Shown one piece after another: positions 53,917 through 64,000 of a stretch of DNA of 64,000 nt (positions are counted from its first letter, which is position 1; each line of letters starts with the position of its first letter). The DNA is taken from IMG/VR virus record IMGVR_UViG_3300031787_007614, positions 300,405 through 364,404 of that record; one strand, given 5' to 3'. The notes under the pieces were generated by a model. That model was not told the DNA's origin, searched no databases, and saw only the letters and a program-made list of their open reading frames with translations. A program made the position numbers and the translations under genes.

Positions 53917-54172
53917 TGGTTCTACGTCTACGTCGGGGTTCTAAATCTTGTTCGCGATAGAGATAGTCTCTTGTGATTTTGCCTTGTTCAATTTCTTCAA
54001 GTACTGCCACTGAGTTGCTGTTTTTACTTGCAACTTTTCGCATGTCGCCGCGATTGAGTTCGCGCAATCGTCGAGAAGCCACTAGCACCAAGTCATAGCG
54101 ATTGCCAATTGCGGCTACTGCGGCTTCGCTGGTCAACCCGGCTGTTCTGTCGTTACTGTGAATAATTTTCAT
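53903..54172 (-). CDS. rpoZ: RNA polymerase omega-subunit-like protein
   Basis: SEAAVAAIGNRYDLVLVASRRLREL...AVLEEIEQGKI matches the omega pattern NR(F/Y)xLVxxAxxRAxQL...ALxEIxxG. Confidence 0.75.
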   Translation of the reverse strand: MKIIHSNDRTAGLTSEAAVAAIGNRYDLVLVASRRLRELNRGDMRKVASKNSNSVAVLEEIEQGKITRDYLYREQDLEPRRRRRTNGSI

Positions 54173-54458
54173 TGTTGTTTCCGTTTGAGTGATGGTGGTT
54201 GAGGGAATCTAAATCTTGAAATAGTTTTTTCTCTTGGGCTGTAAGTTTGTCTTTATGTGTCTTACGTGGATTGCCACACAAGTAACATGCAGGATTGCCG
54301 CAGTCCATGGCATGATGTTTGGCCAGGCGATGTGTTTGCCTAATGCTTCGTAAGTTGTAGGTGCTATGACTTTTGGCAATTTTGACTTGTCTAGCAATTG
54401 CAACATCTGTTTTATGACGGCGAGCTGAGTTTTTGAATTTAGCAAAGTCGTTAGCCAT
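54153..54458 (-). CDS. Hypothetical basic protein with CxxxxCxxC motif
   Basis: CGNPACYLCGNPR. Confidence 0.6.
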   Translation of the reverse strand: MANDFAKFKNSARRHKTDVAIARQVKIAKSHSTYNLRSIRQTHRLAKHHAMDCGNPACYLCGNPRKTHKDKLTAQEKKLFQDLDSLNHHHSNGNNNENYSQ

Positions 54459-54631
54459 CAGCCACCTCTTCCGCTGGCTTTTCTAACAGGTGCTCCTTTG
54501 ATCATTGGTGCGCCGTAGTTTTGTTTGGTCTTGGTAGTTTTGGTTTTTACTGTGGGTCGAGCAGCCTCATGCTTTTTGGCAAGAGCCTCTCGCACAGCGT
54601 CAGTGAGTTTGGAAGATTTTGGATCGTTCAT
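54458..54631 (-). CDS. 57-aa basic hypothetical protein
   Basis: Start MNDPKS, 5 nt after TAAATA. Confidence 0.55.
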   Translation of the reverse strand: MNDPKSSKLTDAVREALAKKHEAARPTVKTKTTKTKQNYGAPMIKGAPVRKASGRGG

Positions 54632-54655
54632 ATAACTATTTAACAATGTAGAACC

Positions 54656-54684
54656 AGTATAACACAGTTCTACATTGTTGTCAA
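54656..54684 (-). promoter_or_regulatory. sigma70 promoter TTGACA-17-TATACT
   Basis: Read directly. Confidence 0.8.
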
Positions 54685-54685
54685 G

Positions 54686-54814
54686 TTACATTGCCTGGAA
54701 TTCTTCCTTACCGCAACCACACTCTGGACAGTTATAGTATTTTGGCAAATCGTCAAATTTACCATCTGTCTCTTCATTGTGGACATGGCCACATACAGTG
54801 CATACGTATTCCAT
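54686..54814 (-). CDS. Rubredoxin (42 aa)
   Basis: MEYVCTVCGHVHNE...FDDLP..YNCPECG.GKEEF; GGAG SD. Confidence 0.9.
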   Translation of the reverse strand: MEYVCTVCGHVHNEETDGKFDDLPKYYNCPECGCGKEEFQAM

Positions 54815-54824
54815 TTCCGTCTCC

Positions 54825-55262
54825 TTATTGTGCTTCTTTGTGAGCAGCCAGGGCTTTGGTGAAACGATTGGCATGTGAGCGTTCGGCTTTGGCCAGTGTT
54901 TCAAACCAGTCAGCAATCTCGTCTAAGCCTTCGTCTCTGGCAGTTTTGGCCATGCCAGGATACATGTCAGTGTATTCATGTGTTTCGCCATGAATAGCAC
55001 TTTCCAGAGCCTGCTCAACAGATTTGGCACTCATGCCAGTGGCGGGATCTCCAGCACCACCTTCGATCAAGTATTCCATATGACCGTGTGCATGTCCAGT
55101 TTCGCCTTCGGCAGTTGAACGGAACAAGGCAGCAACGTCATTGTCGCCTGCTACGTCGGCCATGTTTGCGAAATACAAGTATCGACGATTGGCTTGCGAT
55201 TCTCCGGCAAATGCCGCCTTCAAGTTTTCTTCGGTACGGGTACCTTTTACAGATTGTGTCAT
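54825..55262 (-). CDS. Rubrerythrin (four-helix diiron domain)
   Basis: [35 protein letters not shown]; GGAGG SD. Confidence 0.92.
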
Positions 55263-55364
55263 GTTTCCTCCTATAGTGACATCACTAGTATATAGTATAG
55301 AACATACCTAAGTCAAGGCATTTTGCTATTGTATTTTTCTATGACGGAGTTTGAGGTTTTTTAT

Positions 55365-55439
55365 TGGCCGGCCCTGAGAGGATCGAACTCCCACCGCTTG
55401 TTTCGAAGACAAGCATGATATCCATTTCACCAAGGGCCG
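55365..55439 (-). tRNA. tRNA-Arg(UCG)
   Basis: Cloverleaf; CTTGT-CT TCG AA-ACAAG; CCA end. Confidence 0.9.
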
Positions 55440-55444
55440 AGAAT

Positions 55445-55518
55445 TGGTGCTCCCAACTGGTAACGATCCAGTGTTTCTACATTACCAATGTAGTGTAATG
55501 CCTTTATACTATGAGAGC
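55445..55518 (-). tRNA. tRNA-Thr(GGU), non-canonical T-loop AUCGUUA
   Basis: CTACA-TT GGT AA-TGTAG; CCA end. Confidence 0.85.
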
Positions 55519-55522
55519 TAAG

Positions 55523-55596
55523 TGGAGCAGGATACCAGAATCGAACTGGTGACTGGACCTTGGCAAGGTTCTATTTTACCCCTAAACTAATCCTGC
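55523..55596 (-). tRNA. tRNA-Gly(GCC)
   Basis: GAACC-TT GCC AA-GGTCC; U73, CCA. Confidence 0.9.
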
Positions 55597-55609
55597 ATTC
55601 CGTTACTTA

Positions 55610-56086
55610 TTAGGCAGCTCGTAAACTCTTAAATCTATCTGCCGCGTATGATGCTGCAAATGCTTCTGGCTTCACAAACGGAATCACATTGCATGTTCCT
55701 TTGATGTAGCCCACAGCTTGCGAGATCACACAACTTGAACCGTATTGTTCGTCTGGGTTGATGTCCAAGTGAACTTCAACTTGACGGCCTTCTAGTACGT
55801 CAGCCAGTTTCAAATACAGTTCTGAAACCTTGTACACTTCGGTCATCAAACGCATGGCAGGTTTGCCTGGTTTCACGTCCCACACACGCTCGCGTTGAAC
55901 TTCGCCAAACAGTTTGCAGCCGTTGTTGCCGTTGATGTGTACCACAATGGCCAACACATAGTCGGCATACCAGGTACCGTCAATTTTGATTCGTTCAGAG
56001 TCGCAGCCAAGGTAGATGCGAGTTTCGGGCGTTTGTTTCTGGATAAATTCTGCTACTGATGCTATATCGAGCTTTTTCATTTTCAA
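55610..56086 (-). CDS. RNase H-like YkuK/DUF458 family protein
   Basis: IYLGCDS, RL..EV..., EVHLDIN, KPEAFAASYAAD. Confidence 0.8.
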   Translation of the reverse strand: MKMKKLDIASVAEFIQKQTPETRIYLGCDSERIKIDGTWYADYVLAIVVHINGNNGCKLFGEVQRERVWDVKPGKPAMRLMTEVYKVSELYLKLADVLEGRQVEVHLDINPDEQYGSSCVISQAVGYIKGTCNVIPFVKPEAFAASYAADRFKSLRAA

Positions 56087-56109
56087 CTTTCAAAAATATT
56101 TATTGATAG

Positions 56110-56186
56110 TGGTACCCCAGGAGGGATTCGAACCCTCAGAATTCTCCTTTTGAGAGAGACACGTATTCCAGTTCCGTCACCGGGGC
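56110..56186 (-). tRNA. tRNA-Leu(CAA), short variable loop
   Basis: TCTCT-CT CAA AA-GGAGA; 5-nt V region; A73, CCA. Confidence 0.88.
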
Positions 56187-56192
56187 ATTTGC

Positions 56193-56227
56193 AAAAAAAA
56201 AAACAGTAGGACTGGCCTACTGTTTTT
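56193..56227. terminator. Bidirectional intrinsic terminator
   Basis: A11-CAGTAGG-actgg-CCTACTG-T5. Confidence 0.8.
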
Positions 56228-56257
56228 ATAACTTGTGTCAGACAATCTGATCATGCG

Positions 56258-56557
56258 TTATTCTGTATAATCTTCTACAGTAAATGACACAGGAACAACA
56301 CTAAAAGTTGAAAGTTGTGCAGTCATCCATTCAACAAAGTCTTCTGCATTTTTTTTGTTTTCCCATTTTCGAGTTACAGTTAAATGGGTGGGACCTAGTT
56401 CTGACGGGTCGAGACCTGCGGTACCAACCACAGTAAAGTCATCATGCCCACCGTCTCCAACAATTTGTAAATAATTACTCCAAGGGATAATAGTTCTTGC
56501 TGTTTCTCGATCTTCTACAGACGCATACACCAACACAGTTTTAGCAACTATAGCCAT
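56258..56557 (-). CDS. Hypothetical protein (start MAIVAK)
   Basis: AAGGAG SD and upstream TAAATA. Confidence 0.65.
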   Translation of the reverse strand: MAIVAKTVLVYASVEDRETARTIIPWSNYLQIVGDGGHDDFTVVGTAGLDPSELGPTHLTVTRKWENKKNAEDFVEWMTAQLSTFSVVPVSFTVEDYTE

Positions 56558-56576
56558 AATAATCTCCTTTTTGTAT

Positions 56577-57350
56577 TTATTGCTTTGCGGCAATCACGCT
56601 TAAATGCCAACCTAGCTGTTGATTGACAGCCTGGCGTTGTGCATCGCTCATGGCAGCAAACCATGGTTCCAACACATAATTTCCTTGTTTGTACTGCTCT
56701 ACATTGTACATAAAACAGTAATCTTGCTTGATGCTTTTGATATCAAAGTGTACGTCCAGCAGTTTTTGTATTTCTCCTTGACTGTAAACTCTGGCATATG
56801 GGCAGTTGTCTTGCGCTTCAAACTGGTCCAGCCCAGACTGAATCATTGCCCATTTCCAACTGTTGCGAGCATACACTAGGAAACGAAACTCCCCATCAGA
56901 TGCTAGACTTGCGTAAGCATTGCTGACCACTTGTTCTACATTGGGATAGTGATGCAATACACCACAAGCATACACCATATCAAATTGTCCTAGCCCTGCA
57001 ACACGCTGACTGTCGCCTGCGTCCATGTGATAGAATTCAGCATCTAATCCCATAACAGTAAATCTCTGCTCACAAAGTTCTATGCTACGACTGCTAAGAT
57101 CAATCCCAACGTATTCAGCACCATGCCGTACAAATTGTTCAGCATCAGATCCAATGCCGCATCCTAGTTCTAGCACCCGCCGTCCCTTGCAGTTTTCAAA
57201 GTCGGCCAACTGCCACAAATGCGGCCCAACAAACCATCTACGACGATTGATGTTGTTCCAAAATTCTTCTGTGCCTTCTGGTGCCAACCCATGCTTTATA
57301 TTACAAGGTTGTTGATCCCAGTACTGTTCTATTTGAGTAATTGTAGCCAT
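56577..57350 (-). CDS. Class I SAM-dependent methyltransferase
   Basis: VLELGCGIGSD, GIDLS, FDMVYACGVLHH. Confidence 0.9.
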   Translation of the reverse strand: MATITQIEQYWDQQPCNIKHGLAPEGTEEFWNNINRRRWFVGPHLWQLADFENCKGRRVLELGCGIGSDAEQFVRHGAEYVGIDLSSRSIELCEQRFTVMGLDAEFYHMDAGDSQRVAGLGQFDMVYACGVLHHYPNVEQVVSNAYASLASDGEFRFLVYARNSWKWAMIQSGLDQFEAQDNCPYARVYSQGEIQKLLDVHFDIKSIKQDYCFMYNVEQYKQGNYVLEPWFAAMSDAQRQAVNQQLGWHLSVIAAKQ

Positions 57351-57388
57351 ACAGTGTATTTAAAAGTCTGTGCAAGCTACATTAAATT

Positions 57389-57465
57389 TGGTGCCCCAGA
57401 GGAGACTCGAACTCCTAAAATTTGGCTTCTAAGACCAACACGTATACCAATTCCGTCACCGGGGC
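57389..57465 (-). tRNA. tRNA-Leu(UAG), short variable loop
   Basis: TTGGT-CT TAG AA-GCCAA; 5-nt V region; CCA. Confidence 0.88.
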
Positions 57466-57476
57466 TTAAATACATC

Positions 57477-57680
57477 ATGCAAACCAAACAAGACTCCATC
57501 AAAAAAATAGAGCGTTTGCTTGCAATGGAAACATTGGGCAAAACGTTTGTGACCAAACAACAACAGTTGGCCTACGAGCGCGGATATCTAACAGGCTTGC
57601 TGGCTGCTATGGCCTACAACGACAATTCAGTCGAGCATGTGGTGAATCAACGCATCAAACATCTTACACCTAAAATCTAA
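57477..57680 (+). CDS. 67-aa hypothetical protein on the strand opposite the tRNAs
   Basis: MQTKQDSIKK...; TAAATA 4 nt upstream; fills a tRNA spacer. Confidence 0.6.
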   Translation: MQTKQDSIKKIERLLAMETLGKTFVTKQQQLAYERGYLTGLLAAMAYNDNSVEHVVNQRIKHLTPKI

Positions 57681-57681
57681 C

Positions 57682-57757
<76 letters not shown>

Positions 57758-57762
57758 ATGAA

Positions 57763-57837
57763 TGGTGGGTGATGAGAGGATCGAACTCCCGACAAACTGC
57801 GTGTAAGGCAGCGACTCTACCGCTGAGCTAATCACCC
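57763..57837 (-). tRNA. tRNA-Val(UAC)
   Basis: Canonical cloverleaf, CCA. Confidence 0.95.
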
Positions 57838-57842
57838 GTATA

Positions 57843-57933
57843 TGGTGGAAGTGGTGAGATTCGAACTCACGGACCCCTTTCGGAGCCGGCAGTTTTCAAG
57901 ACTGCTGCAATCAACCAACTCTGCCACACTTCC
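57843..57933 (-). tRNA. tRNA-Ser(UGA)
   Basis: Long V arm; GCAGT-CT TGA AA-ACTGC; CCA. Confidence 0.95.
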
Positions 57934-57949
57934 TAAAAAATTAAAAAAG

Positions 57950-58100
57950 ATACTGCTTTGCGTTTAAAGGTACTGAACATCCTTTCGGGTAGCTCACATC
58001 CTTCCTGGCACATGGTTCGACTGTGACTAGCAGTCTGGAACTTAATCCCAGCGGCACCTGGATAACGTTAAGGTCCCTAGCAGTTGGGCCCATAGTCAAT
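57950..58100 (-). ncRNA. Candidate structured spacer RNA
   Basis: Possible closing helix ACUGCU/AGCAGU, CC-GAAA-GG hairpin, CTAGCAGT repeated twice; no ORF called. Confidence 0.3.
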
Positions 58101-58127
58101 GAGTTTTTCACACATCTTTTCTAAACT

Positions 58128-58203
58128 TGGAGTAGGTGACAGGACTCGAACCTGCATTATACGGATTTGCAATCCGGCGCCTAGCCATTCGGCACACACC
58201 TAC
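58128..58203 (-). tRNA. tRNA-Cys(GCA)
   Basis: U73, CCA; TT GCA AA loop. Confidence 0.92.
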
Positions 58204-58209
58204 ATCTAT

Positions 58210-58286
58210 TGGTCGGAGTACGAGGGTTCGAACCTCGGACCTCCTGGTCCCAAACCAGGCGCACTACCAGGCTGTGCTATACTCCG
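58210..58286 (-). tRNA. tRNA-Pro(UGG)
   Basis: C1-G72; CCTGG-TT TGG GA-CCAGG. Confidence 0.95.
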
Positions 58287-58292
58287 TGTATT

Positions 58293-58511
58293 TTATTTTA
58301 CTTTGGGTTCTTGACTTTTGTCAAGTTCATGGGGTTCAGCAAATCTTGTGCCGTGGCCCAGATTCCAACTGTCTGCTGTGAAAATTTTTACAGGCTTCCA
58401 GTAACGACTTATGATGTTGTTGACAGCAACAGCCGCCGCCACAATCACTACAAATCCTATTGCTGTCAAAATACTACCAGCTAAGAATACAGCCGCTTGA
58501 TCCATGTCCAT
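58293..58511 (-). CDS. Small membrane protein
   Basis: One hydrophobic helix; fills the spacer between tRNA-Gly and tRNA-Pro. Confidence 0.6.
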   Translation of the reverse strand: MDMDQAAVFLAGSILTAIGFVVIVAAAVAVNNIISRYWKPVKIFTADSWNLGHGTRFAEPHELDKSQEPKVK

Positions 58512-58524
58512 TGTTTGTTCCTTG

Positions 58525-58598
58525 TGGAGCAGGGTAGGGGAATCGAACCCCTCGCTTTAGCTTGGAAGGCTAAGGTATTACCACTATACGAACCCTGC
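58525..58598 (-). tRNA. tRNA-Gly(UCC)
   Basis: TTAGC-CT TCC AA-GCTAA; CCA. Confidence 0.95.
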
Positions 58599-58610
58599 GT
58601 TAAAATACTT

Positions 58611-58639
58611 ATTATACAACACTCAGACACTGTTGTAAA
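58611..58639 (-). promoter_or_regulatory. Internal sigma70 promoter TTTACA-17-TATAAT
   Basis: Read directly; just upstream of tRNA-Gly(UCC). Confidence 0.65.
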
Positions 58640-58646
58640 GATCATT

Positions 58647-58721
58647 TGGTTGCCATGGACAGTTTCGAAATGTCGACCTATCGCTTATCAAGCGATTGCT
58701 CTTCCTCTGAGCTACACGGCA
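58647..58721 (-). tRNA. tRNA-Ile(GAU)
   Basis: ATCGC-TT GAT AA-GCGAT; CCA. Confidence 0.9.
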
Positions 58722-58727
58722 AAAACT

Positions 58728-58801
58728 TGGCACGGGTACTAGGGCTCGAACCTAGAATGACAGAGTCAAAGTCTGTAGTGTTACCATTACACTATACCCG
58801 A
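58728..58801 (-). tRNA. tRNA-Gln(UUG)
   Basis: ACAGA-CT TTG AC-TCTGT; G73; U1-U72 mismatch. Confidence 0.92.
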
Positions 58802-58813
58802 ACAAAAACTATT

Positions 58814-58888
58814 TGGTGGATGTAAGTAGAGTCGAACTACCACTTGACTCCGTATGAAGGAGGCGCACTACCATTATGCTATACATCC
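58814..58888 (-). tRNA. tRNA(CAU): elongator Met or Ile2
   Basis: G1-C72, A73, loop TT CAT AC; identity not resolvable by eye. Confidence 0.85.
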
Positions 58889-58892
58889 ATGT

Positions 58893-58984
58893 TGGTACCC
58901 CCACCGGGAGTCGAACCCAGATGAACCAATTATCTGTTGCTTACGGGATATAAATCCGCCGTTTTACCATTAAACTATAGGGGC
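58893..58984 (-). tRNA. tRNA-Ile(UAU)-like with 22-nt variable arm
   Basis: Loop TT TAT AT, A31-C39 mismatch, canonical T-arm, CCA; 92 nt. Confidence 0.7.
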
Positions 58985-58989
58985 ATGTC

Positions 58990-59064
58990 TGGGGTGTCGT
59001 ATGAGAATCGAACTCATGACAGCGGAATCACAACCCGCGGTTTTGCCACTAAACTAACGTCACC
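58990..59064 (-). tRNA. tRNA-His(GUG)
   Basis: G-1:C73 encoded; TT GTG AT loop. Confidence 0.92.
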
Positions 59065-59153
59065 ATATAGGAACACACTCAGGCGTAGTAGTTCGTTAGC
59101 CCACTAAGATACACGGCTACCACCCGTGTCATTAGTTGAATGTGTTTTTATAT
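59065..59153 (-). ncRNA. Closing-stem spacer element A
   Basis: 16-nt arms AUAUAAAAACACAUUC / GAGUGUGUUCCUAUAU filling the whole Lys-His spacer. Confidence 0.55.
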
Positions 59154-59227
59154 GGTAGGGGCGCCGGGATTCGAACCCGAAATTGGCAGATTAAAAGTCT
59201 GCTGTGATACCGTTTCACCACACCCCC
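59153..59227 (-). tRNA. tRNA-Lys(UUU)
   Basis: GCAGA-CT TTT AA-TCTGC; CCA. Confidence 0.95.
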
Positions 59228-59288
59228 GGTATCTTGTCACTCTTGTCACTATTCATGACAGACTCTCCTTTTTAAAATAAGTATTTGA

Positions 59289-60413
59289 ATGAACAAATAT
59301 TGTCCAAAACCATTTGTTAGTATTCATATGTATACTGATAAAGATCTCAATCCAACTGTTAGGCCTTGTTGCAATTACAAACCTATCAAGCAGTACGCAA
59401 CGATTAATGATTATTTGCAATCATCTGAACTAGCGTCTCTTCAGCAACATTTGCTTACAAAAGAATCATTGCCAGATGGATGCAAGGCATGCAAAGTAGA
59501 CGAAGATAATAACTTGCCTAGTATCCGAAACAAGTATATTAAAGTGTTTGAGCATGAAACCAAAACTAAAATTGTTGACTTGGAAATTTTCCCTGGCAAC
59601 GCATGTAATCTCAGTTGCTTGTCGTGCAATCCTTCTCATAGTACCAAATCAGGTCAGGAATATGCCAAACTTGGATGGATTAAACAATCAATAGTGATCA
59701 ATCACGAAGATCATGCACTTGAAGTTATTAAACAGTTGCCAGACCTTAAATCAATAGGTTTTATTGGCGGCGAATTTTTTGTAACCAAACACAATATTGA
59801 ATTGCTCGATGCGGTTATTGAAAAAAATCTTAAAACACGAATTATTACCAATGCCACTCAACTAACCAAAAAACATCTTGAGCGGTTACAAAAAATATCT
59901 GACCTTGATGTGATGGTTAGTGTAGACGGTACTGGGCCAACATTTGAATTTTTACGCTATCCGGCACAATGGTCAGTTGTGCAATCAAACATTGTTGCAC
60001 TACAACAGGCATTGCCCGGAGCAAAGATACATTTGTCGGCAGTGTTGCAATTTTTAAATTTGCAAAATATCATTGAACTGTTTGAATACGCCAATGTCCG
60101 TCGACTGCCATTTAATGTGATCCCTTTATCTTATCCTGTTTGGCTACAGTCAGAAGTGCTTACCACTCTCGAACGTCAGCAGTTGATTGCAGTTATACAA
60201 AAACAACTAACAGTTGCAAAACTTACCAAAACACAAAAACAGTTAATGACTGATACATGTAGTATGCTAGAAACAATACAGCACTCACCTGCTCAACGAG
60301 AACAGTTTGTGTCTCGAACAAGCCAGCTGATTCGACTGCGCAACATCACACAACACACAATCAACTCAGTGTTTGGTGTGCTAGAAAATTTAGCGCAAGA
60401 AGTTATACAATAG
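59289..60413 (+). CDS. Twitch/SPASM-domain radical SAM protein inserted in the tRNA array
   Basis: CNLSCLSC, GGEF, N-terminal PCC and CKAC; TAAGTA 5 nt upstream. Confidence 0.85.
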   Translation: MNKYCPKPFVSIHMYTDKDLNPTVRPCCNYKPIKQYATINDYLQSSELASLQQHLLTKESLPDGCKACKVDEDNNLPSIRNKYIKVFEHETKTKIVDLEIFPGNACNLSCLSCNPSHSTKSGQEYAKLGWIKQSIVINHEDHALEVIKQLPDLKSIGFIGGEFFVTKHNIELLDAVIEKNLKTRIITNATQLTKKHLERLQKISDLDVMVSVDGTGPTFEFLRYPAQWSVVQSNIVALQQALPGAKIHLSAVLQFLNLQNIIELFEYANVRRLPFNVIPLSYPVWLQSEVLTTLERQQLIAVIQKQLTVAKLTKTQKQLMTDTCSMLETIQHSPAQREQFVSRTSQLIRLRNITQHTINSVFGVLENLAQEVIQ

Positions 60414-60453
60414 CCAGGGACCTAACTCGTCAAGGGAGAGTATGGCTATGTGT

Positions 60454-60531
60454 TGGTACCACCTGAGAGATTCGAACTCCCCGCCCCTGCGTTCGTAGCA
60501 CAGTGCTCTAATCCAAATGAGCTAAGGTGGT
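60454..60531 (-). tRNA. tRNA-Arg(ACG)
   Basis: CTGTG-CT ACG AA-CGCAG; CCA. Confidence 0.92.
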
Positions 60532-60539
60532 GTATTGAA

Positions 60540-60739
60540 TTTGAGAGTAGTAGCATCACTGTTATTGCTACCATTGACCCGTGTAATAAAGCCGGCCGGG
60601 AGGGTGATACGTCACTTGGAATACTTAACACACAGATTGATTACTTAGTTGTGTACGGAATCACGCCGCCCGTGCTTTACACTAGGTTGACCTTCGAAGA
60701 ATCTTCCTAGCGTGTCTTTCTCTTGCTGACACTCTCAAA
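60540..60739 (-). ncRNA. Candidate ~200-nt multibranched RNA
   Basis: Perfect 9-bp terminal stem UUUGAGAGU/ACUCUCAAA enclosing at least six hairpins. Confidence 0.6.
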
Positions 60740-60742
60740 ACT

Positions 60743-60816
60743 TGGTGCCCCACGACAGAATCGAACTGCCATCACAGGATTACAAAACCAGTGTACTACC
60801 ATTGTACTAGTAGGGC
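60743..60816 (-). tRNA. tRNA-Thr(UGU)
   Basis: TT TGT AA loop; weak anticodon stem; CCA. Confidence 0.85.
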
Positions 60817-60822
60817 GAATTG

Positions 60823-60912
60823 TGGTGGAAGACTAGGGAGTCGAACCCTATGACCCTATTACTAGAATCTACAGATTAGCAATCTGCTGCATTACCGTCC
60901 TGCCCGTCTTCC
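60823..60912 (-). tRNA. tRNA-Ser(GCU)
   Basis: Long V arm; TT GCT AA; CCA. Confidence 0.93.
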
Positions 60913-60917
60913 TGACT

Positions 60918-60993
60918 TGGCTCCCCAGCGTGGGATCGAACCACGGACACCTTGATTAACAGTCAAGTGCAACTACCGCTGTGCTACTAGGGA
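60918..60993 (-). tRNA. tRNA-Asn(GUU)
   Basis: CTTGA-CT GTT AA-TCAAG; G73. Confidence 0.95.
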
Positions 60994-61033
60994 ATAATCT
61001 ACTTAGTAGGCACTCGAGCCTACTACAAAAATA

Positions 61034-61126
61034 TGGTGGAGCAACTTGGAGTCGAACCAAGAATGTTTACCACGAGGGGACGGATTTACAGTCCGCCGAT
61101 GCACACGCCATAGCATCAATTGCTCC
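61034..61126 (-). tRNA. tRNA-Tyr(GUA) with extended D-arm
   Basis: GCGGA-CT GTA AA-TCCGT; D stem GATGC/GCATC; 18-nt V region. Confidence 0.85.
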
Positions 61127-61131
61127 ATATT

Positions 61132-61206
61132 TGGTGGACCGGCGGGGGATCGAACCCCGACTAAAGGCTTGCAAAGCCCCTGTGCTCCCATTATCACTAC
61201 CAGCCC
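61132..61206 (-). tRNA. tRNA-Ala(UGC)
   Basis: G3-U70 identity pair; TT TGC AA. Confidence 0.93.
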
Positions 61207-61212
61207 AAATTT

Positions 61213-61286
61213 TGGCATCCCGGGAGGGACTCGAACCCCCACGAACGGTTTTGGAGACCGTCATGCTGCCATTACACCACCGAGAC
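61213..61286 (-). tRNA. tRNA-Trp(CCA)
   Basis: ACGGT-CT CCA AA-ACCGT; G73. Confidence 0.93.
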
Positions 61287-61294
61287 ATAATTTT

Positions 61295-61370
61295 AACACA
61301 CTCTTGCGAATGTGTGTATTAAAACATTCTAAACTACTTAGGCTGCCTGTTTGTAAAGAATGTTTTAATA
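61295..61370 (-). ncRNA. Closing-stem elements B and C (tandem)
   Basis: ACACAUUC-GCAA-GAGUGUGU hairpin, and a perfect 14-bp inverted repeat UAUUAAAACAUUCU/AGAAUGUUUUAAUA. Confidence 0.55.
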
Positions 61371-61468
61371 CGCTCGGATTTTTTTATGTACAAGAACATA
61401 AGCCATCCCCGAGGCCGCCCATTTGTAGTTTAGAGTGATACAGGCTCGCGTTGCCGTTGCACTAAATG

Positions 61469-61496
61469 AAAAAACCCAGGGTTTTTACGCCTGGGT
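61469..61496 (-). terminator. Attenuator terminator
   Basis: ACCCAGG-9nt-CCUGGGU followed by U5. Confidence 0.8.
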
Positions 61497-61524
61497 CCTT
61501 GGGTAAGATACGGTTGTATACTAC

Positions 61525-61632
61525 TTAGGACCCTCTGCCTCCTGGAATGCTATTCATGCGACCATAGGCGTGTGACCAAACTGGTGTCTGGGCAAACTTG
61601 GGTAGCAGTGAACAATATTGTGTTTTCATCAT
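61525..61632 (-). CDS. Putative 35-aa leader peptide (leaderless)
   Basis: MMKTQYCSLLPKFAQTPVWSHAYGRMNSIPGGRGS*; the stop codon overlaps the antiterminator 5' strand. Confidence 0.6.
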   Translation of the reverse strand: MMKTQYCSLLPKFAQTPVWSHAYGRMNSIPGGRGS

Positions 61633-61639
61633 AAGTCCT

Positions 61640-61668
61640 ATTGTACAGTATTTACCTTTTGAGGTCAA
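61640..61668 (-). promoter_or_regulatory. sigma70 promoter TTGACC-17-TACAAT (nested TAAATA in spacer)
   Basis: Read directly; the -10 lies 7 nt before the leader ATG. Confidence 0.85.
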
Positions 61669-61704
61669 CCACTGTGTTAAAGTTATTTAGCCTTTCGGCT
61701 GAAT

Positions 61705-61779
61705 TGGTTGCGGGGGAAGGAATCGAACCTCCGTCTCCCAGGTTATGAGCCTGGTGGTCTACCGCTGACGTACCCCGCG
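61705..61779 (-). tRNA. tRNA-fMet(CAU)
   Basis: C1-A72 mismatch; CT CAT AA; CCA. Confidence 0.9.
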
Positions 61780-61790
61780 ATTGAATTATT

Positions 61791-61872
61791 TATATAGAAA
61801 CACACTCTATGCTTGGGGAACAATTCATTGAATTGAGCAACCACCAACGGGTACGGAGTGCGTTTGTATATA
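61791..61872 (-). ncRNA. Closing-stem spacer element D
   Basis: 17-nt arms UAUAUACAAACGCACUC / GAGUGUGUUUCUAUAUA. Confidence 0.55.
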
Positions 61873-61875
61873 AAG

Positions 61876-62774
61876 TGGCGGACTGAGAATACATCCTAAC
61901 CCAGTAACACCTCGGACATTATTACAAACCTTGCGAGTCTGCTTTCTTCCGATTTCCACTGCAACCATATTGCTATGTATCACAGTCTGTTACCAGTATC
62001 GCCGTTTTTAAAGACAGGCAGTAGTCTTGTCATCACATGCTACTCTACACCATCTATCCCGTTGACCTTTAGAGCCATTCACTGTCGCTAAACAGTTACG
62101 AAACTTCCAGTATAAACAGATTTCACCTTGCGAGTTACGTCTGACTGTATTGCCTTGCGGCTACAGCATTAGATACTTTTCACACATGACCGAGTCAGTC
62201 TTTGCTTTTATGTTAGATAGTGGTTTTGAAGCCACAGCCTATTCCTTAACAGGGAATTGCTCTACGATGAGCTATATCAACCTACTGCGATGTGCTGACT
62301 CAGTTGCTTCATACTCTTTTGGAATACAAAATACAACACACCACGTTCCTTTTGTCTTGCGAACTACTCAGACGTCTTTTGCGATCAGTGTCGGGTCTCG
62401 GCTTTCGCGTACCTCCACCAACCACTCAAACTGCATACGAGCCCTTGGGTGCAACCCCTCGGACCGATACGCTACCCTTTCTCATACCAATTAACTGGGC
62501 TGGTTTTGTATAGAAGTCAGCACCACCTGTTACTTTTCTGCAACTCCGGTTACCCTTGCGGGCCGGTAAGTTACAGCTCTTTCCTATACTCCCAGCGTCA
62601 TTGTTACAACCACCGGTCTTATCAGTGATCGGATCCTCACGGACCTGAGCAGGCTTGTTTACATGAACCATTGCTGGCGGACTTATGTAGGCATACATCC
62701 TTTGGCTGGGTCACCCCAGTTATTCTTCGTACAGCTGGGCGAACCATACTGCACAGGACAATAAACTGCCCTAT
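61876..62774 (-). ncRNA. ~900-nt highly structured ncRNA, GOLLD-like candidate
   Basis: Own consensus promoter, many GCAA/GAAA tetraloop hairpins on the minus strand, long-range complementarities, no credible ORF, heads a phage tRNA array. Confidence 0.65.
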
Positions 62775-62780
62775 GTATCT

Positions 62781-62809
62781 ATTGTAAGACAAACGTCTTT
62801 TGTTGTCAA
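62781..62809 (-). promoter_or_regulatory. sigma70 promoter TTGACA-17-TACAAT
   Basis: Read directly. Confidence 0.9.
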
Positions 62810-62900
62810 ACAGTTTTGGATAAATTTGTTGTTTATCTATCCAAAATAGTCTGTAACAGTTTTCTGCAGTCGTGTTACAGTGGGCAAATAAGTACCCCAC

Positions 62901-63872
62901 ATGATCACTGAAATCTTAACCTATCACCACAGTCTCGACTGGAACATTGAACAATTCGTTGATAGCACATGTCTAGCAAACATTGTTCAGCCACACTGGC
63001 CAATGGTAACTTCTTCCAAAGGAGGATTGATACCAACAAATAAACCCAGCCGAGACTTTTTTGAGCTCAATAAAAAACGAGGACGTCCTACTGAACTTAG
63101 GAACAGTACCATTGACGCCTTGGTCAGTCTTGTGGCAACAAAATTGCATCTCAACGGATTTGTTACGAATGTGGTAGCAGAATGCAGTGGAAGCATGCAT
63201 GCCTTGTACACTGCATCCATGGTGAGCTTGCAACACCAATTACCAGTGATTGTTTTTTGTGCTGATAATTTAGTTGATGACGAACTTCACATGTGGCGAT
63301 TTGCCAGTATGGGTGCATTGGATCAATCCTCAGGAAGAGCATTTGACTCAACCAGTACTGGATTTCGAATGGGTAGAGGCATGGCTGCAATGTTGATAAA
63401 ACATCCAAGTGTAAAATTCAACATGAGTGCATTTGCCACAATCAGCAATTATATCTTTCGTACCAACCCCACACTCATAGCCAATCCAGGTGATGCGCAC
63501 CAATTGGCCAGAGATATTTCTGGCATCAATTTTGACACCATTGATTTTTGGAATGCACATGCAACAGGCACTCCAGTGGGAGATCAATTTGAGTACAATG
63601 TTTTTAATTCTTTAGTTCACAAAGACATACCTATTGTCAGCTACAAAAGCCGCATAGGGCACTGTATCTCAGCCAGCGGCGCCATTGAAATGTGCATGAG
63701 TTTTGACGATTACCGTGCAAAAACCCTAAGACCCAATGTGTTAGCTGGTGATCTCATAGTCAAAGATTCAAGGATCATCGTAGATGCTGTGCCGTTTCCG
63801 GGCAAACGCATACTCAAGGCCAATTTTGGATTTGGCGGCAAAAACAGTTTTTGCCAAATTGACATTGAATAG
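62901..63872 (+). CDS. Beta-ketoacyl synthase (FabF/FabB-like, short)
   Basis: AECSG catalytic Cys, NAHATGT, SYKSRIGHCISASGA, NFGFGGKN; TAAGTA 6 nt upstream. Confidence 0.88.
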   Translation: MITEILTYHHSLDWNIEQFVDSTCLANIVQPHWPMVTSSKGGLIPTNKPSRDFFELNKKRGRPTELRNSTIDALVSLVATKLHLNGFVTNVVAECSGSMHALYTASMVSLQHQLPVIVFCADNLVDDELHMWRFASMGALDQSSGRAFDSTSTGFRMGRGMAAMLIKHPSVKFNMSAFATISNYIFRTNPTLIANPGDAHQLARDISGINFDTIDFWNAHATGTPVGDQFEYNVFNSLVHKDIPIVSYKSRIGHCISASGAIEMCMSFDDYRAKTLRPNVLAGDLIVKDSRIIVDAVPFPGKRILKANFGFGGKNSFCQIDIE

Positions 63873-64000
63873 ATTCTATAGTCAAGCACCGAGAGATGCT
63901 CAATTTATGCGTCCTCCGCTAAGAGTGCAATAGCCGATAGCAGTTATATTAGGATCCGTTCCCGGCCGGTTGGACCCGAATAGCGTAAGCGTCCTTACAC

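What the first reader, a model, noticed from the sequence alone, without database searches (positions are those of the whole stretch)
59065..61872. Family of four spacer elements sharing one closing helix around different cargo
Elements at 59065-59153, 61295-61317, 61317-61370 and 61791-61872 share the stem AA/ACAC(A)UUC...GA(G/A)UGU(G)UU, with A/U-rich outer pairs in three of them. Inserts are 57, 4 (GCAA), 26 and 48 nt. G-U wobbles favour the minus (tRNA) strand. The first fills the Lys-His spacer exactly, so tRNA processing would release it. It could be a double-strand RNase processing signal, a protein-binding carrier stem for small RNAs, or a miniature mobile/recombination site.
Basis: partly seen in the sequence, partly recalled or inferred. 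Interest (0 to 1): 0.65.

Follow-up and report, generated by a model that had tools for sequence, protein, structure and literature searches.

The report
Carrier hairpins in phage tRNA arrays
Two of the four elements belong to a large family of phage RNA hairpins, absent from Rfam 15 and from the papers searched, that sit between tRNA genes, keep a nearly invariant 17-base-pair closing stem and carry many unrelated small structured inserts that are swapped between phages; what the inserts do is unknown.

Summary
All four stems exist, but they are not one family. El.1 (59061-59157, minus) and El.4 (61788-61875, minus) belong to a large phage-specific family. Its consensus is CCAUAUAAAAACACAYU, then 30-110 nt of cargo, then ARUGUGUUUCUAUAUGG.

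- **Size and specificity:** an IMG/VR scan hit its 120-locus limit, and I mapped 217 copies. A scan of 596 Gb of cellular genomes gave chance-level hits only.
- **Helix:** it covaries at 15 of 17 positions. Its outer three pairs are the CCA of the upstream tRNA paired with U-1, G+1 and G+2 of the downstream tRNA.
- **Upstream tRNA:** 76% of the tRNAs immediately upstream are Lys(UUU), Gln(UUG) or Glu(UUC).
- **Cargo:** 79 clusters among the first 111 distinct cargos. Cargos are structured, fold better on the tRNA strand, and their identity is uncoupled from the identity of the flanking tRNA. A contig 99.8% identical in its flanks to the window carries a different cargo in El.1's arms.
- **El.3 and El.2:** these are helices P2 and P3 of a separate conserved ~150-nt structured RNA upstream of tRNA-Trp. 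El.2 reuses the same invariant inner helix, ACACAUU/AGUGUGU.

Best reading: these are co-transcribed carrier hairpins that tRNA-processing nucleases release as capped small RNAs. Release is inferred and cargo function is unknown. Rfam 15 and the literature I searched contain nothing like them. The cultured cyanophage BUCT-ZZ01 carries two copies and could serve as a test system.

The parts
59061..59157 (-). El.1: canonical carrier hairpin between tRNA-Lys(UUU) and tRNA-His.
   Evidence: Model R1 scores it at 56.8 bits, E 3.8e-10. It is inverted repeat I5. Fold energy is -36.1 kcal/mol, z -4.2. The same cargo type occurs in at least 12 IMG/VR contigs in different contexts.
61788..61875 (-). El.4: variant carrier hairpin directly 3' of GOLLD RNA and 10 nt 5' of tRNA-Met. 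Outer pairs are UUA/UAA instead of CCA/UGG. The cargo is the conserved motif CGUAYCCGUUGNUGGUYGCU, a hairpin, then UUCCCNAAGCAUA.
   Evidence: R1 scores it at 37.8 bits, E 6e-6. In an RNAalifold of 7 relatives, 17 of 30 pairs show compensatory changes while the internal-loop sequence stays invariant. The same cargo occurs in three kinds of carrier.
61292..61442 (-). Separate conserved structured RNA, probably the 5' leader of the Trp-Ala-Tyr-Asn-Ser-Thr tRNA sub-cluster. It has a 6-bp helix P1, then P2 (El.3), then P3 (El.2), with conserved single strands GGGCGG, GGAUG and AAAAAU.
   Evidence: Alignment and RNAalifold of 9 loci give 19 of 33 pairs with compensatory changes. Rfam has no match at E <= 1.
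61316..61371 (-). El.3: helix P2 of that RNA. It is a 15-bp covarying carrier helix, GUAUUAAAACAUUCU/AGAAUGUUUUAAUAC, around a 26-nt insert that differs between relatives.
   Evidence: Inverted repeat I12 is 100% complementary. Covariation is shown. R1 scores it at only 18-19 bits, E about 0.1. In L079/L204 this helix holds the El.4-type cargo.
61296..61315 (-). El.2: helix P3 of that RNA, ACACAUUC-GCAA-GAGUGUGU. The 7-bp core with its U.G wobble is identical to the inner helix of the carrier family.
   Evidence: The core is invariant in 9 of 9 relatives, while the closing pair next to the loop covaries G-C/C-G/A-U. Recurrence in other loci is shown. R1 does not detect it.
59153..59227 (-). 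tRNA-Lys(UUU). Its 3' CCA (59155-59153) forms the three outer pairs of El.1.
   Evidence: ARAGORN and Rfam. In 136 of the 140 family copies with a tRNA immediately upstream, the hairpin overlaps that tRNA by exactly 3 nt.
58990..59063 (-). tRNA-His. G-1 and G+1 (59064, 59063) pair with the CC of tRNA-Lys's CCA.
61880..62344 (-). GOLLD RNA with an embedded tRNA-like domain at 62211-62281. El.4 begins 5 nt after the end of the GOLLD match.
   Evidence: Rfam RF02032, 204 bits, E 5e-57. The same GOLLD-then-hairpin order occurs in L044.

Best explanation
El.1 and El.4 are transcribed 'carrier hairpins' that belong to the phage's polycistronic tRNA transcript. A 17-bp helix, conserved in sequence, closes over an exchangeable structured RNA module of 30-110 nt. 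The outer half of the helix is A/U-rich and the inner half is ACACAYU/ARUGUGU.

In the precursor, the three outermost pairs clamp the CCA end of the upstream tRNA to U-1, G+1 and G+2 of the downstream tRNA. The upstream tRNA is mostly Lys(UUU), Gln(UUG) or Glu(UUC).

**Inferred order of events**
1. RNase P cuts at the 5' end of the downstream tRNA and removes the GG partners.
2. The weak A/U-rich outer helix frays next to the CCA.
3. An endonuclease cuts there. This could be RNase E in the A/U-rich strand, or RNase III across the helix.
4. The cut matures the upstream tRNA and frees a small RNA. The stable inner helix caps the ends of that RNA, and its apical module is the working part.

The same invariant inner helix is reused as El.2 in a different leader RNA. 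This points to a factor acting in trans that reads this helix.

At the DNA level the near-invariant arms and the flanking tRNAs act as recombination handles. Cargos are therefore swapped horizontally between phages.

**Shown:** the family, its helix, its restriction to phages, its co-orientation with and exact abutment to tRNAs, the structure of the cargos, and cargo exchange.

**Inferred:** transcription, the cleavage order, the nucleases involved, a binding factor, and any cargo function.
For: **Family and specificity**
The flanks that the pattern did not specify are almost invariant: CCATAT upstream in 128 of 153 sites and ATGG downstream in 129 of 153.
- The same pattern in 596 Gb of cellular genomes gave 57 hits, of which only 1-2 have the family flanks.
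- A relaxed search found 217 sites, 1-7 per locus.

**Helix**
- 95 distinct arm pairs show compensatory double changes at 15 of 17 positions.
- Where no tRNA flanks the element, the outer pairs change from CCA/UGG to UUA/UGA or UCA/UGA.

**RNA strand**
- The model prefers the tRNA strand.
- G.U pairs favour the tRNA strand 72 to 18 outside the two fixed odd positions.
- Cargos fold better on the tRNA strand in 77% of 111 cases, p = 5e-10.

**Relation to tRNAs**
- 136 of 140 upstream tRNAs are overlapped by exactly 3 nt.
- 64 downstream tRNAs are overlapped by 1-2 nt.
- 107 of 140 upstream tRNAs are Lys(UUU), Gln(UUG) or Glu(UUC), although these make up only 13.5% of the tRNA genes in the loci.
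- Tandem runs occur, for example Lys followed by five hairpins and then Arg in L090.

**Cargo is structured RNA**
- The El.4 type has 17 of 30 pairs compensated and invariant internal loops.
- The El.1 type shows a CACGG/CCGUG to CACAG/CUGUG change.

**Cargo exchange**
- L008 has El.1's arms and 99.8%-identical flanks but a different cargo.
- Among site pairs whose tRNA-Lys is at least 97% identical, 22 of 27 have cargos at shuffled-level identity.
- 20 pairs with less than 80% tRNA-Lys identity share cargos at least 85% identical.

**Shared inner helix:** El.2 is invariant in 9 of 9 relatives.
Against: - No expression or end-mapping data exist, so release as a discrete RNA is inference only.
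- In the commonest variant, an A.C mismatch at position 8 would be a G.U pair on the opposite strand. Single copies therefore do not settle the strand.
- A 17-bp helix is short for a canonical RNase III site, and no nuclease or binding protein has been tied to it.
  - The array-resident YkuK-like RNase H-fold gene is near only 32 of 121 loci. It also occurs in phage DLP6, which has no hairpins.
- The strong conservation of arm sequence could result from frequent recombination rather than from a reader protein.
- The enrichment for Lys, Gln and Glu is inflated by shared ancestry and by how the loci were found.
Confidence: 0.55

Rival explanations
1. The element works mainly at the DNA level. 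The conserved inverted arms would be recombination hot-spots, like the PeSL cassettes of T4-type phages or, more loosely, integron attC sites. They would shuffle tRNA genes and short inserts between co-infecting phages, and the inserts themselves would have no function.
For: - Cargo identity is uncoupled from the identity of the flanking tRNA.
- The same arms hold different cargo in a 99.8%-identical relative.
- The same cargo occurs next to different tRNAs and in different carriers.
- Near-identical contigs differ by indels the size of a tRNA.
- HNH endonuclease genes lie near 20 of the 121 sources.
Against: - Cargo types keep their helices through compensatory changes and keep their internal loops invariant. 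Junk DNA would not do this.
- Pairing of the arms is preserved by compensatory changes, including G.U pairs biased to the tRNA strand. Homology alone does not need pairing.
- The element is always co-oriented with the tRNAs.
- The arms contain no sigma-70 promoter, which is a defining part of a PeSL.
- There are no GTTRRRY boxes, and no integrase among the ten most frequent neighbouring protein clusters that I annotated.
- The indels seen do not end at the arms.
Confidence: 0.2
2. The element is a cis-acting maturation clamp for particular tRNAs. Only the helix would matter: it would hide the CCA end of tRNA-Lys, Gln or Glu and the 5' end of the next tRNA. This would time or order their processing, or protect the precursor. 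The insert would be a neutral loop free to drift or be replaced.
For: - The helix overlaps the CCA by exactly 3 nt and the next tRNA by 1-2 nt.
- 76% of the upstream partners are the three tRNAs that share a U34 wobble base.
- The outer pairs covary when the flank is not a tRNA.
Against: - Cargos are not neutral: their structure covaries and their loops are invariant.
- Hairpins also occur in tandem with no tRNA between them and directly after GOLLD.
- 77 of 217 copies have no tRNA immediately upstream.
- The same inner helix occurs as El.2 in a leader RNA, where it clamps nothing.
Confidence: 0.15
3. The hairpins are Y-RNA-like scaffolds for the phage's own Ro60 protein. The conserved stem would be the Ro60-binding site, and the variable module would tether other factors.
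For: - A DUF2828+DUF7788 protein (phrog_850) sits in the same tRNA arrays. Its model matches Ro60/TROVE structures over its full length (Foldseek E 2e-8 to 2e-4).
- 31 of 79 loci found through that protein carry hairpins, and 53 of those 54 hairpins lie on the gene's strand.
- A few long cargos contain T-arm-like sequences.
Against: - The arms lack the Ro60-binding motif GGUCCGA or GNCGAAN(0-1)G described in PMC4201824.
- The Rfam YrlA and Y_RNA models do not hit the hairpins.
- Hairpins mostly lie 1-10 kb from the Ro60-like gene.
- A separate YrlA-like RNA lies about 260 nt upstream of that gene in L213.
- The window's 64 kb has hairpins but no Ro60-like gene.
- Phage DLP6 has the gene but no hairpins.
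Confidence: 0.06

Closest known systems
Phage T4 stable RNAs species 1 and 2 (rnaC, rnaD) in the T4 tRNA cluster (from my own knowledge; I did not retrieve the papers)
   Same: They are small structured non-tRNA RNAs encoded among phage tRNA genes. They are co-transcribed with the tRNAs and cut out by host tRNA-processing nucleases, and their function is still unknown.
   Different: I did not test for sequence similarity. T4 has two fixed RNAs, not a conserved closing helix with hundreds of interchangeable inserts. Pairing of a CCA end with the next tRNA's 5' end is not described for them.
tRNA-linked pre-miRNA hairpins (TMERs) of murine gammaherpesvirus 68 (from my own knowledge)
   Same: One or more hairpins directly follow a viral tRNA-like gene and are released by tRNA 3'-end processing.
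   Different: That system is eukaryotic and uses Pol III, tRNase Z and Dicer. Its hairpins are miRNA precursors. Here the cargos are structured domains rather than 22-nt duplexes, and the stem sequence is conserved across phages.
PeSL promoter/stem-loop cassettes of T4-type phages (PMC2839356, PMC4122927)
   Same: They are short conserved intergenic motifs containing a stem-loop. They are repeated in T4-like genomes and associated with modular swapping between close relatives.
   Different: A PeSL is a short terminator-like stem-loop plus a sigma-70 or Mot-type promoter, and it flanks ORFs. The carrier hairpins have no promoter. They span 70-130 nt, enclose structured inserts, overlap tRNA ends and covary as RNA.
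Y RNAs and YrlA with Ro60 (PMC4201824)
   Same: Their ends pair into a conserved stem and they carry a variable module that is sometimes tRNA-like. They can occur in tandem, are found in phages, and a Ro60 homologue lies in the same arrays.
   Different: The Ro60-binding motif is absent, the Rfam models do not match, the hairpins are not adjacent to the Ro60 gene, and a separate YrlA-like RNA is present.
GOLLD and ROOL RNAs (Rfam RF02032; PMC5737381; bioRxiv 10.1101/2024.12.08.627333)
   Same: They are phage-encoded structured RNAs of unknown function that lie in or beside tRNA islands. GOLLD is directly followed by a carrier hairpin in the window and in L044.
   Different: GOLLD and ROOL are single large RNAs of 400-800 nt with one conserved fold. 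The hairpins are small and modular, and they lie outside the GOLLD model, which ends at 61880.
Integron attC sites, REPINs/BIMEs and Neisseria Correia elements (from my own knowledge; attC is also discussed in PMC5737381)
   Same: They are imperfect inverted repeats with conserved ends and a variable middle. They fold as hairpins, and Correia elements are cut by RNase III when transcribed.
   Different: The hairpins have no attC R/L boxes and no integrase or RAYT gene was seen nearby. There are only 1-7 copies per genome, at tRNA junctions. The internal sequences are unrelated to one another yet each is conserved and structured.

Membership tests
Any Rfam 15 family | A covariance-model match at or near the family's gathering score | tested here: not met
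   cmscan of window 54000-64000 at E <= 1 found nothing over 59061-59157, 61788-61875 or 61292-61442. A scan of 13 related loci at gathering scores found only tRNA, GOLLD and tmRNA.
GOLLD RNA (is El.4 its 3' end?) | The element lies inside the conserved GOLLD model | tested here: not met
   The full-length GOLLD match (model positions 1-416 of 416) ends at 61880 and El.4 starts at 61875. The same cargo and helix occur without GOLLD after tRNA-Lys in L026.
Y RNA / YrlA | A Ro60-binding motif (GGUCCGA or GNCGAAN0-1G) in or near the terminal stem | tested here: not met
   The consensus arms CCAUAUAAAAACACAYU/ARUGUGUUUCUAUAUGG lack the motif described in PMC4201824.
Y RNA / YrlA | Encoded next to a Ro60 (TROVE) gene | tested here: inconclusive
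   A Ro60-fold protein lies in the same arrays. Hairpins are mostly 1-10 kb from it, and a separate YrlA-like match lies directly upstream of the gene.
RNase III processing stalk | A double-stranded helix of roughly two turns formed by sequences flanking the released RNA | tested here: inconclusive
   The helix is 17 bp, conserved and covarying, and often carries one A.C mismatch. That is shorter than the roughly 20-22 bp of classical sites.
RNase III processing stalk | Staggered cleavage by RNase III | not testable with these tools
   This needs an in vitro cleavage assay or end mapping.
PeSL cassette | A sigma-70 or Mot-type promoter joined to the stem-loop | tested here: not met
   The promoter scan found no site in the arms of El.1 or El.4. 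The one promoter-like site over El.2 (61318-61290) coincides with an RNA helix that is conserved as structure.
PeSL cassette | Association with modular replacement between close relatives | tested here: met
Integron attC | R''/R' core sites (RYYYAAC ... GTTRRRY) and an integron integrase nearby | tested here: not met
   The arms do not fit the core sites. There is no integrase among the ten most frequent neighbouring protein clusters that I annotated.
MITE / REPIN | Many copies per genome that share internal sequence as well as terminal repeats | tested here: not met
   There are 1-7 copies per locus, with unrelated insides: 79 clusters among 111 distinct cargos.
Intrinsic terminator | A G+C-rich hairpin followed by a run of U | tested here: not met
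   None of the four elements is in the terminator scan. The arms are followed directly by a tRNA, not by a T-run.

The most novel reading that the evidence does not exclude
The carrier helix is the handle of a modular RNA-cassette system. A dedicated factor, from the phage or the host, would read the invariant ACACAUU/AGUGUGU helix. Phages would trade a large repertoire of small structured RNA modules on that handle, such as decoys, aptamers or mimics. These modules would be placed preferentially behind tRNA-Lys(UUU), Gln(UUG) and Glu(UUC), which are classic targets of anticodon nucleases. They would serve as fast-evolving counter-defence or host-takeover RNAs. In effect this would be an RNA analogue of an integron or CRISPR-like exchangeable array.
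Probability: 0.22. Interest if true: 0.92.

Novelty: new variant of a known kind. Interest (0 to 1): 0.8.

Why it matters
Phage tRNA arrays are usually read simply as lists of tRNAs. This work shows that in a large group of uncultured T4-like phages the spacers hold a conserved, modular RNA element; the environmental clues available point to fresh water. It combines three properties:
- a nearly invariant closing helix that is physically tied to tRNA ends;
- dozens to hundreds of distinct structured inserts;
- clear horizontal exchange of those inserts.

If the inserts are effectors, this is a large untapped repertoire of phage small RNAs with a natural release mechanism built in. If only the helix matters, it is a new signal for ordering tRNA maturation.

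Either way it adds two new RNA families beside GOLLD, a phage Ro60 homologue with a YrlA-like RNA, and tmRNA, all in the same arrays. It also names a cultured system, cyanophage BUCT-ZZ01 on Synechococcus elongatus PCC 7942, in which this can be tested.

Tried and rejected
1. **BLAST against cultured phages.** The 3.5-kb region matched only tRNAs. A 106-nt hairpin query found nothing, because the arms are too short for BLAST.
2. **A sigma-70 promoter (TTGTAC, 17 nt, TATTAA) over El.3's 5' arm.** I rejected this reading. In relatives the '-35' lies in a variable hairpin and the '-10' is part of a covarying helix. A MotA-box reading of TGCTTTA also fails, because the spacing to any -10 element is wrong.
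3. **A codon-in-arm idea.** I asked whether the 5' arm carries the codon of the upstream tRNA. The arm variants show no such pattern and simply track the tRNA slot.
4. **Antisense targets.** Cargos blasted against about 1.3 Mb of held phage DNA hit only other hairpins or tRNA T-arms.
5. **The Y RNA hypothesis.** The Ro60 homologue is real, but the motif, the Rfam models and adjacency all fail.
6. **YkuK-like RNase H-fold gene as a dedicated nuclease.** It is near only 32 of 121 loci, and it also occurs in DLP6, which has no hairpins.
7. **Pair counting on the model-fitted alignment A2.** This was uninformative because its top 150 hits are nearly all canonical arms read on both strands. The relaxed arm set was used instead.
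8. **Precise excision.** tRNA-Lys genes without a hairpin have ordinary 5-10-nt spacers and no arm remnants.
9. **Metagenome scan.** I did not use it because the viral scan already hit its limit.

Full report
**Setting.** The window ends in a minus-strand array of 25 tRNA genes at 55365-61779. A GOLLD RNA lies at 61880-62344 (Rfam RF02032, 204 bits) and contains a tRNA-like domain. Three genes sit inside the array: a radical-SAM gene on the opposite strand, a SAM methyltransferase, and a YkuK-like RNase H-fold gene. No cultured phage resembles the region at the DNA level apart from the tRNAs. The identical radical-SAM protein is encoded on at least 24 metagenomic contigs that are 97-100% identical to the window.

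**The observation.** All four stems are real.
- Three are long-range inverted repeats of 15-20 nt with 85-100% complementarity. The fourth is an 8-bp hairpin with a GCAA loop.
- Each folds much better than shuffled sequence, with z from -4.2 to -6.7.
- El.1 fills the Lys-His spacer exactly. Its outer pairs use the CCA of tRNA-Lys and G-1/G+1 of tRNA-His.

**El.1 and El.4 belong to a large family.**
- I scanned IMG/VR for the part shared by El.1 and El.4: AAACRCAYT, then 30-60 nt, then RTGTGTTYCTAT.
- The bases next to the pattern, which the pattern did not specify, are almost invariant. CCATAT lies upstream in 128 of 153 sites and ATGG downstream in 129 of 153.
- The same pattern in 596 Gb of bacterial and archaeal genomes gave 57 hits. 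That is no more than the roughly 140 my own rough calculation predicts by chance for unbiased base composition. Only one or two of those hits have the family flanks, and one of them is a 1.5-kb contig binned into a MAG. The element is therefore specific to phages.
It found 217 sites in the 120 loci plus the window, 1-7 per locus.

**The helix.**
- The consensus on the tRNA strand is CCAUAUAAAAACACAYU, cargo ending in A, then RUGUGUUUCUAUAUGG.
- Among 95 distinct arm pairs, 15 of 17 positions show changes on both sides that keep the pair. One example is AUAUA.A/U.UAUAU changing to AUAUU.G/C.AAUAU. Others are A-U to G-C at positions 9 and 11 and C-G to U-A at positions 12 and 14.
- Position 16 alternates between U.G, U-A and C-G.
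- Position 8 is A.C in the commonest variant but G-C or A-U in others, so the mismatch is not essential.
- Where the element is not next to a tRNA, the outer CCA/UGG becomes UUA/UGA or UCA/UGA. The helix is therefore selected for in its own right.

**Which strand.**
- The fixed A.C at position 8 and U.G at position 16 cancel each other out.
- Across the family the answer is clear. Outside those two positions, G.U pairs favour the tRNA strand 72 to 18 (tally).
- The covariance model prefers that strand for El.1 (56.8 against 43.7 bits) and El.4 (37.8 against 33.4 bits).
- Cargos fold better on that strand in 77% of 111 cases (Wilcoxon p = 5e-10).

**Relation to tRNAs.**
- Of the 217 sites, 140 have a tRNA immediately upstream on the same strand. 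In 136 of those the element overlaps the tRNA by exactly three bases, the CCA.
- 64 sites overlap the downstream tRNA by one or two bases.
- The upstream tRNA is Lys(UUU) in 71 cases, Gln(UUG) in 20 and Glu(UUC) in 16. Together that is 76%, although these three make up only 13.5% of the 1944 tRNA genes in the loci.
- Shared ancestry and the way the loci were found inflate this figure. Even so, the Lys junction persists while the cargo and the downstream tRNA change (Met, His, Ser, Ala, Asp and others).
- Arm variants follow the upstream tRNA. The Glu slot uses CCAUAUUA/G....
- Hairpins also occur in tandem. L090 has Lys, five hairpins, then Arg. BUCT-ZZ01 has Lys, two hairpins, then Met.
- Hairpins directly follow GOLLD in the window and in L044.

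**The cargo.**
- The first 111 distinct cargos fall into 79 clusters. Lengths run from about 30 to 110 nt.
- They are not junk. El.4's cargo type was found in seven distinct sequence contexts. Its apical hairpin and its carrier helix covary (17 of 30 pairs with compensatory changes). The internal-loop sequences CGUAYCCGUUGNUGGUYGCU and UUCCCNAAGCAUA stay invariant.
- That cargo sits in three kinds of carrier: canonical arms after tRNA-Lys (L026), arms with different outer halves (L205, L206, L209), and the El.3-type helix of the leader RNA described below (L079, L202).
- El.1's cargo type occurs in at least 12 contigs: between Lys and His, between Lys and other neighbours, and inside tandem hairpin runs. 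It shows one compensatory pair change.

**Cargo exchange.**
- Contig L008 is 99.8% identical to the window on the tRNA-Lys side and keeps El.1's arms, including the rare UUCC variant of the 3' arm. It nevertheless holds a different 45-nt cargo, and the break lies exactly at the arm-cargo borders.
- More generally, among pairs of Lys-hairpin sites whose tRNA-Lys is at least 97% identical, 22 of 27 have cargos at the identity level of shuffled sequence (median 0.34 against 0.33).
- Conversely, 20 pairs with less than 80% tRNA-Lys identity share cargos that are at least 85% identical.

**El.3 and El.2 are something else.**
- The family model gives El.3 only 18-19 bits (E about 0.1) and does not detect El.2.
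- Searching the loci for El.2's hairpin showed that it recurs with a conserved upstream context.
- Nine loci align over about 150-175 nt. The aligned RNA contains:
  - a conserved CACUNUAAA box, possibly a promoter -10 element (inference);
  - the single strands GGGCGG, GGAUG and AAAAAU;
  - helix P1, 6 bp, covarying and enclosing a variable hairpin;
  - helix P2, which is El.3: 15 bp, covarying, with a variable insert;
  - helix P3, which is El.2.
- 19 of 33 pairs show compensatory changes.
- In the window this RNA lies at 61292-61442, after a terminator-like hairpin near 61465-61500 and just before tRNA-Trp. It looks like the structured 5' leader of a tRNA sub-cluster.
- El.2's seven core pairs, ACACAUU/AGUGUGU with the U.G wobble, are invariant in all nine, while the closing pair next to the loop covaries. 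This is the same sequence as the inner helix of the carrier family.
It looks like a motif constrained in sequence, which suggests a factor acting in trans. I could not identify such a factor.

**Phage group and neighbouring genes.**
- Genes near the hairpins include T4 RegA, dCMP deaminase, an RNA polymerase omega-like protein, Hsp20 and HNH endonucleases.
- The closest cultured relative carrying the array's YkuK-like gene together with hairpins is Synechococcus phage BUCT-ZZ01. It belongs to the Kyanoviridae, came from a lake, and infects S. elongatus PCC 7942. Model R1 finds a hairpin directly after its tRNA-Lys(UUU) (27.4 bits) and another near its tmRNA (29.1 bits). Reading the sequence shows a second hairpin in tandem before tRNA-Met.
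- Stenotrophomonas phage DLP6 has the gene but no hairpins.

**A Ro60 side-track.**
- A 477-aa DUF2828+DUF7788 protein (phrog_850, annotated 'RNA-binding protein') recurs in these arrays.
- Its AlphaFold model (pLDDT 69) matches Ro60/TROVE structures over its full length. Matches include the phage phiLo Ro60 (E 3e-7), Deinococcus Rsr and Xenopus and human Ro60.
- At least 555 IMG/VR contigs encode relatives. Of 79 loci fetched through that protein, 31 carry hairpins, and 53 of those 54 hairpins lie on the gene's strand. The share rises to 61% for loci of at least 15 kb.
- The hairpins nevertheless lie 1-10 kb from the gene. They lack the Ro60-binding motif described in PMC4201824. A separate YrlA-like RNA lies about 260 nt upstream of the gene in L213 (Rfam 37.7 bits, below the gathering score).
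- I therefore do not classify the hairpins as Y RNAs.

**Mechanism.**
- The data show a structured element on the tRNA strand that is tied to tRNA ends, carries conserved structured modules and is exchanged horizontally.
- I infer that it is co-transcribed with the tRNAs, because it overlaps them on both sides.
- I infer this order of cleavage: RNase P cuts at the downstream tRNA and removes the GG partners. The A/U-rich outer helix beside the CCA then opens. An endonuclease cuts there, either RNase E, which prefers A/U-rich single strands just after tRNA 3' ends in E. coli (established knowledge), or RNase III across the helix. This would mature the upstream tRNA and leave a small RNA whose ends are protected by the stable inner helix.
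- The function of the cargos is unknown. Their diversity, their exchange between phages and their position behind Lys, Gln and Glu tRNAs fit an arms-race role. Lys(UUU) is the classic target of anticodon nucleases such as PrrC and PARIS (established knowledge; PMC11464382 for PARIS). That role is speculation.

**Novelty.** Rfam 15 has no matching family. Seven full-text searches found no description of the element. The nearest concepts are listed below, and none shares the defining anatomy.
- T4's stable RNAs in its tRNA cluster
- herpesviral tRNA-linked pre-miRNA hairpins
- PeSL cassettes
- Y RNAs

I rate it a new variant of a known kind (small structured RNAs co-transcribed with phage tRNAs), with an unusual modular design.

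Noticed in passing
window 61880-62344 (-), with 62211-62281: A full-length GOLLD RNA (204 bits) contains a tRNA-like domain that Rfam scores at 50.6 bits and ARAGORN does not call. Contig L007 has a 35-nt tandem duplication inside it at about 62110, and L005 has deletions at 62140-62210.
   Followed up: partly
window 61292-61442 (-): A conserved ~150-nt structured RNA, not in Rfam, lies upstream of tRNA-Trp. It has helices P1, P2 and P3, with 19 of 33 pairs compensated across 9 loci. It probably starts just after a conserved CACUNUAAA box that may be a promoter -10 element.
   Followed up: partly
window 61794-61787 (-): The 3' arm of El.4 contains TATAAATA, the consensus of T4-type late promoters, 7 nt before tRNA-Met. 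It could give that tRNA a late start site. Canonical arms do not contain this sequence.
   Followed up: no
window 59289-60413 (+), 56577-57350 (-), 55610-56086 (-): Three protein genes sit inside the tRNA array: a radical-SAM enzyme antisense to the tRNAs, a SAM methyltransferase (a PHROG 'tRNA methyltransferase' is its second-best hit), and a YkuK/PF04308 RNase H-fold protein. In phage DLP6 the YkuK-like gene directly follows tRNA-Lys(UUU).
   Followed up: partly
window 58500-58661, 59045-59177, 60850-60997, 62664-62821 compared with L001-L010: Contigs 97-100% identical to the window differ by indels the size of a tRNA. L002 lacks El.1 together with parts of tRNA-Lys and tRNA-His. L008 has an HNH endonuclease gene and a different set of tRNAs after 60816. 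Some of these differences may be assembly artefacts.
   Followed up: partly
window 58893-58984 (-): tRNA-Ile(UAU) is 92 nt long, about 17 nt longer than normal. Phage DLP6 has a tRNA-Ile-TAT of the same odd length (L211 11650-11741).
   Followed up: no
window 61525-61668 (-), 61668-61640, about 61465-61500: A 47-codon ORF sits between tRNA-Met and the leader RNA. It has its own promoter-like site (TTGACC, 17 nt, TACAAT) and a terminator-like hairpin followed by a T-run.
   Followed up: no
window 60532-60742 (-): The 211-nt Thr-Arg spacer is closed by another long-range helix (60540-55 with 60724-39, 81% complementary). Its 3' end is followed by AAUUCAAU, the same sequence that follows El.4. 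It is not a member of the carrier family by the model.
   Followed up: no
L059 3658-5091; L213 9641-9739 and 10001-11425; L210 23320-24720: A phage Ro60 (TROVE+vWA) homologue, annotated as DUF2828/DUF7788, lies inside tRNA arrays of at least 555 IMG/VR contigs and of cultured phages BUCT-ZZ01 and DLP6. In L213 a YrlA-like RNA lies about 260 nt upstream of it.
   Followed up: partly
L017 13913-14302, L044 754-1160, L210 19068-19486: The same tRNA arrays contain phage-encoded tmRNA genes. In BUCT-ZZ01 the 3' arm of a carrier-like helix (L210 18976-19102) overlaps the start of the ARAGORN tmRNA call.
   Followed up: no
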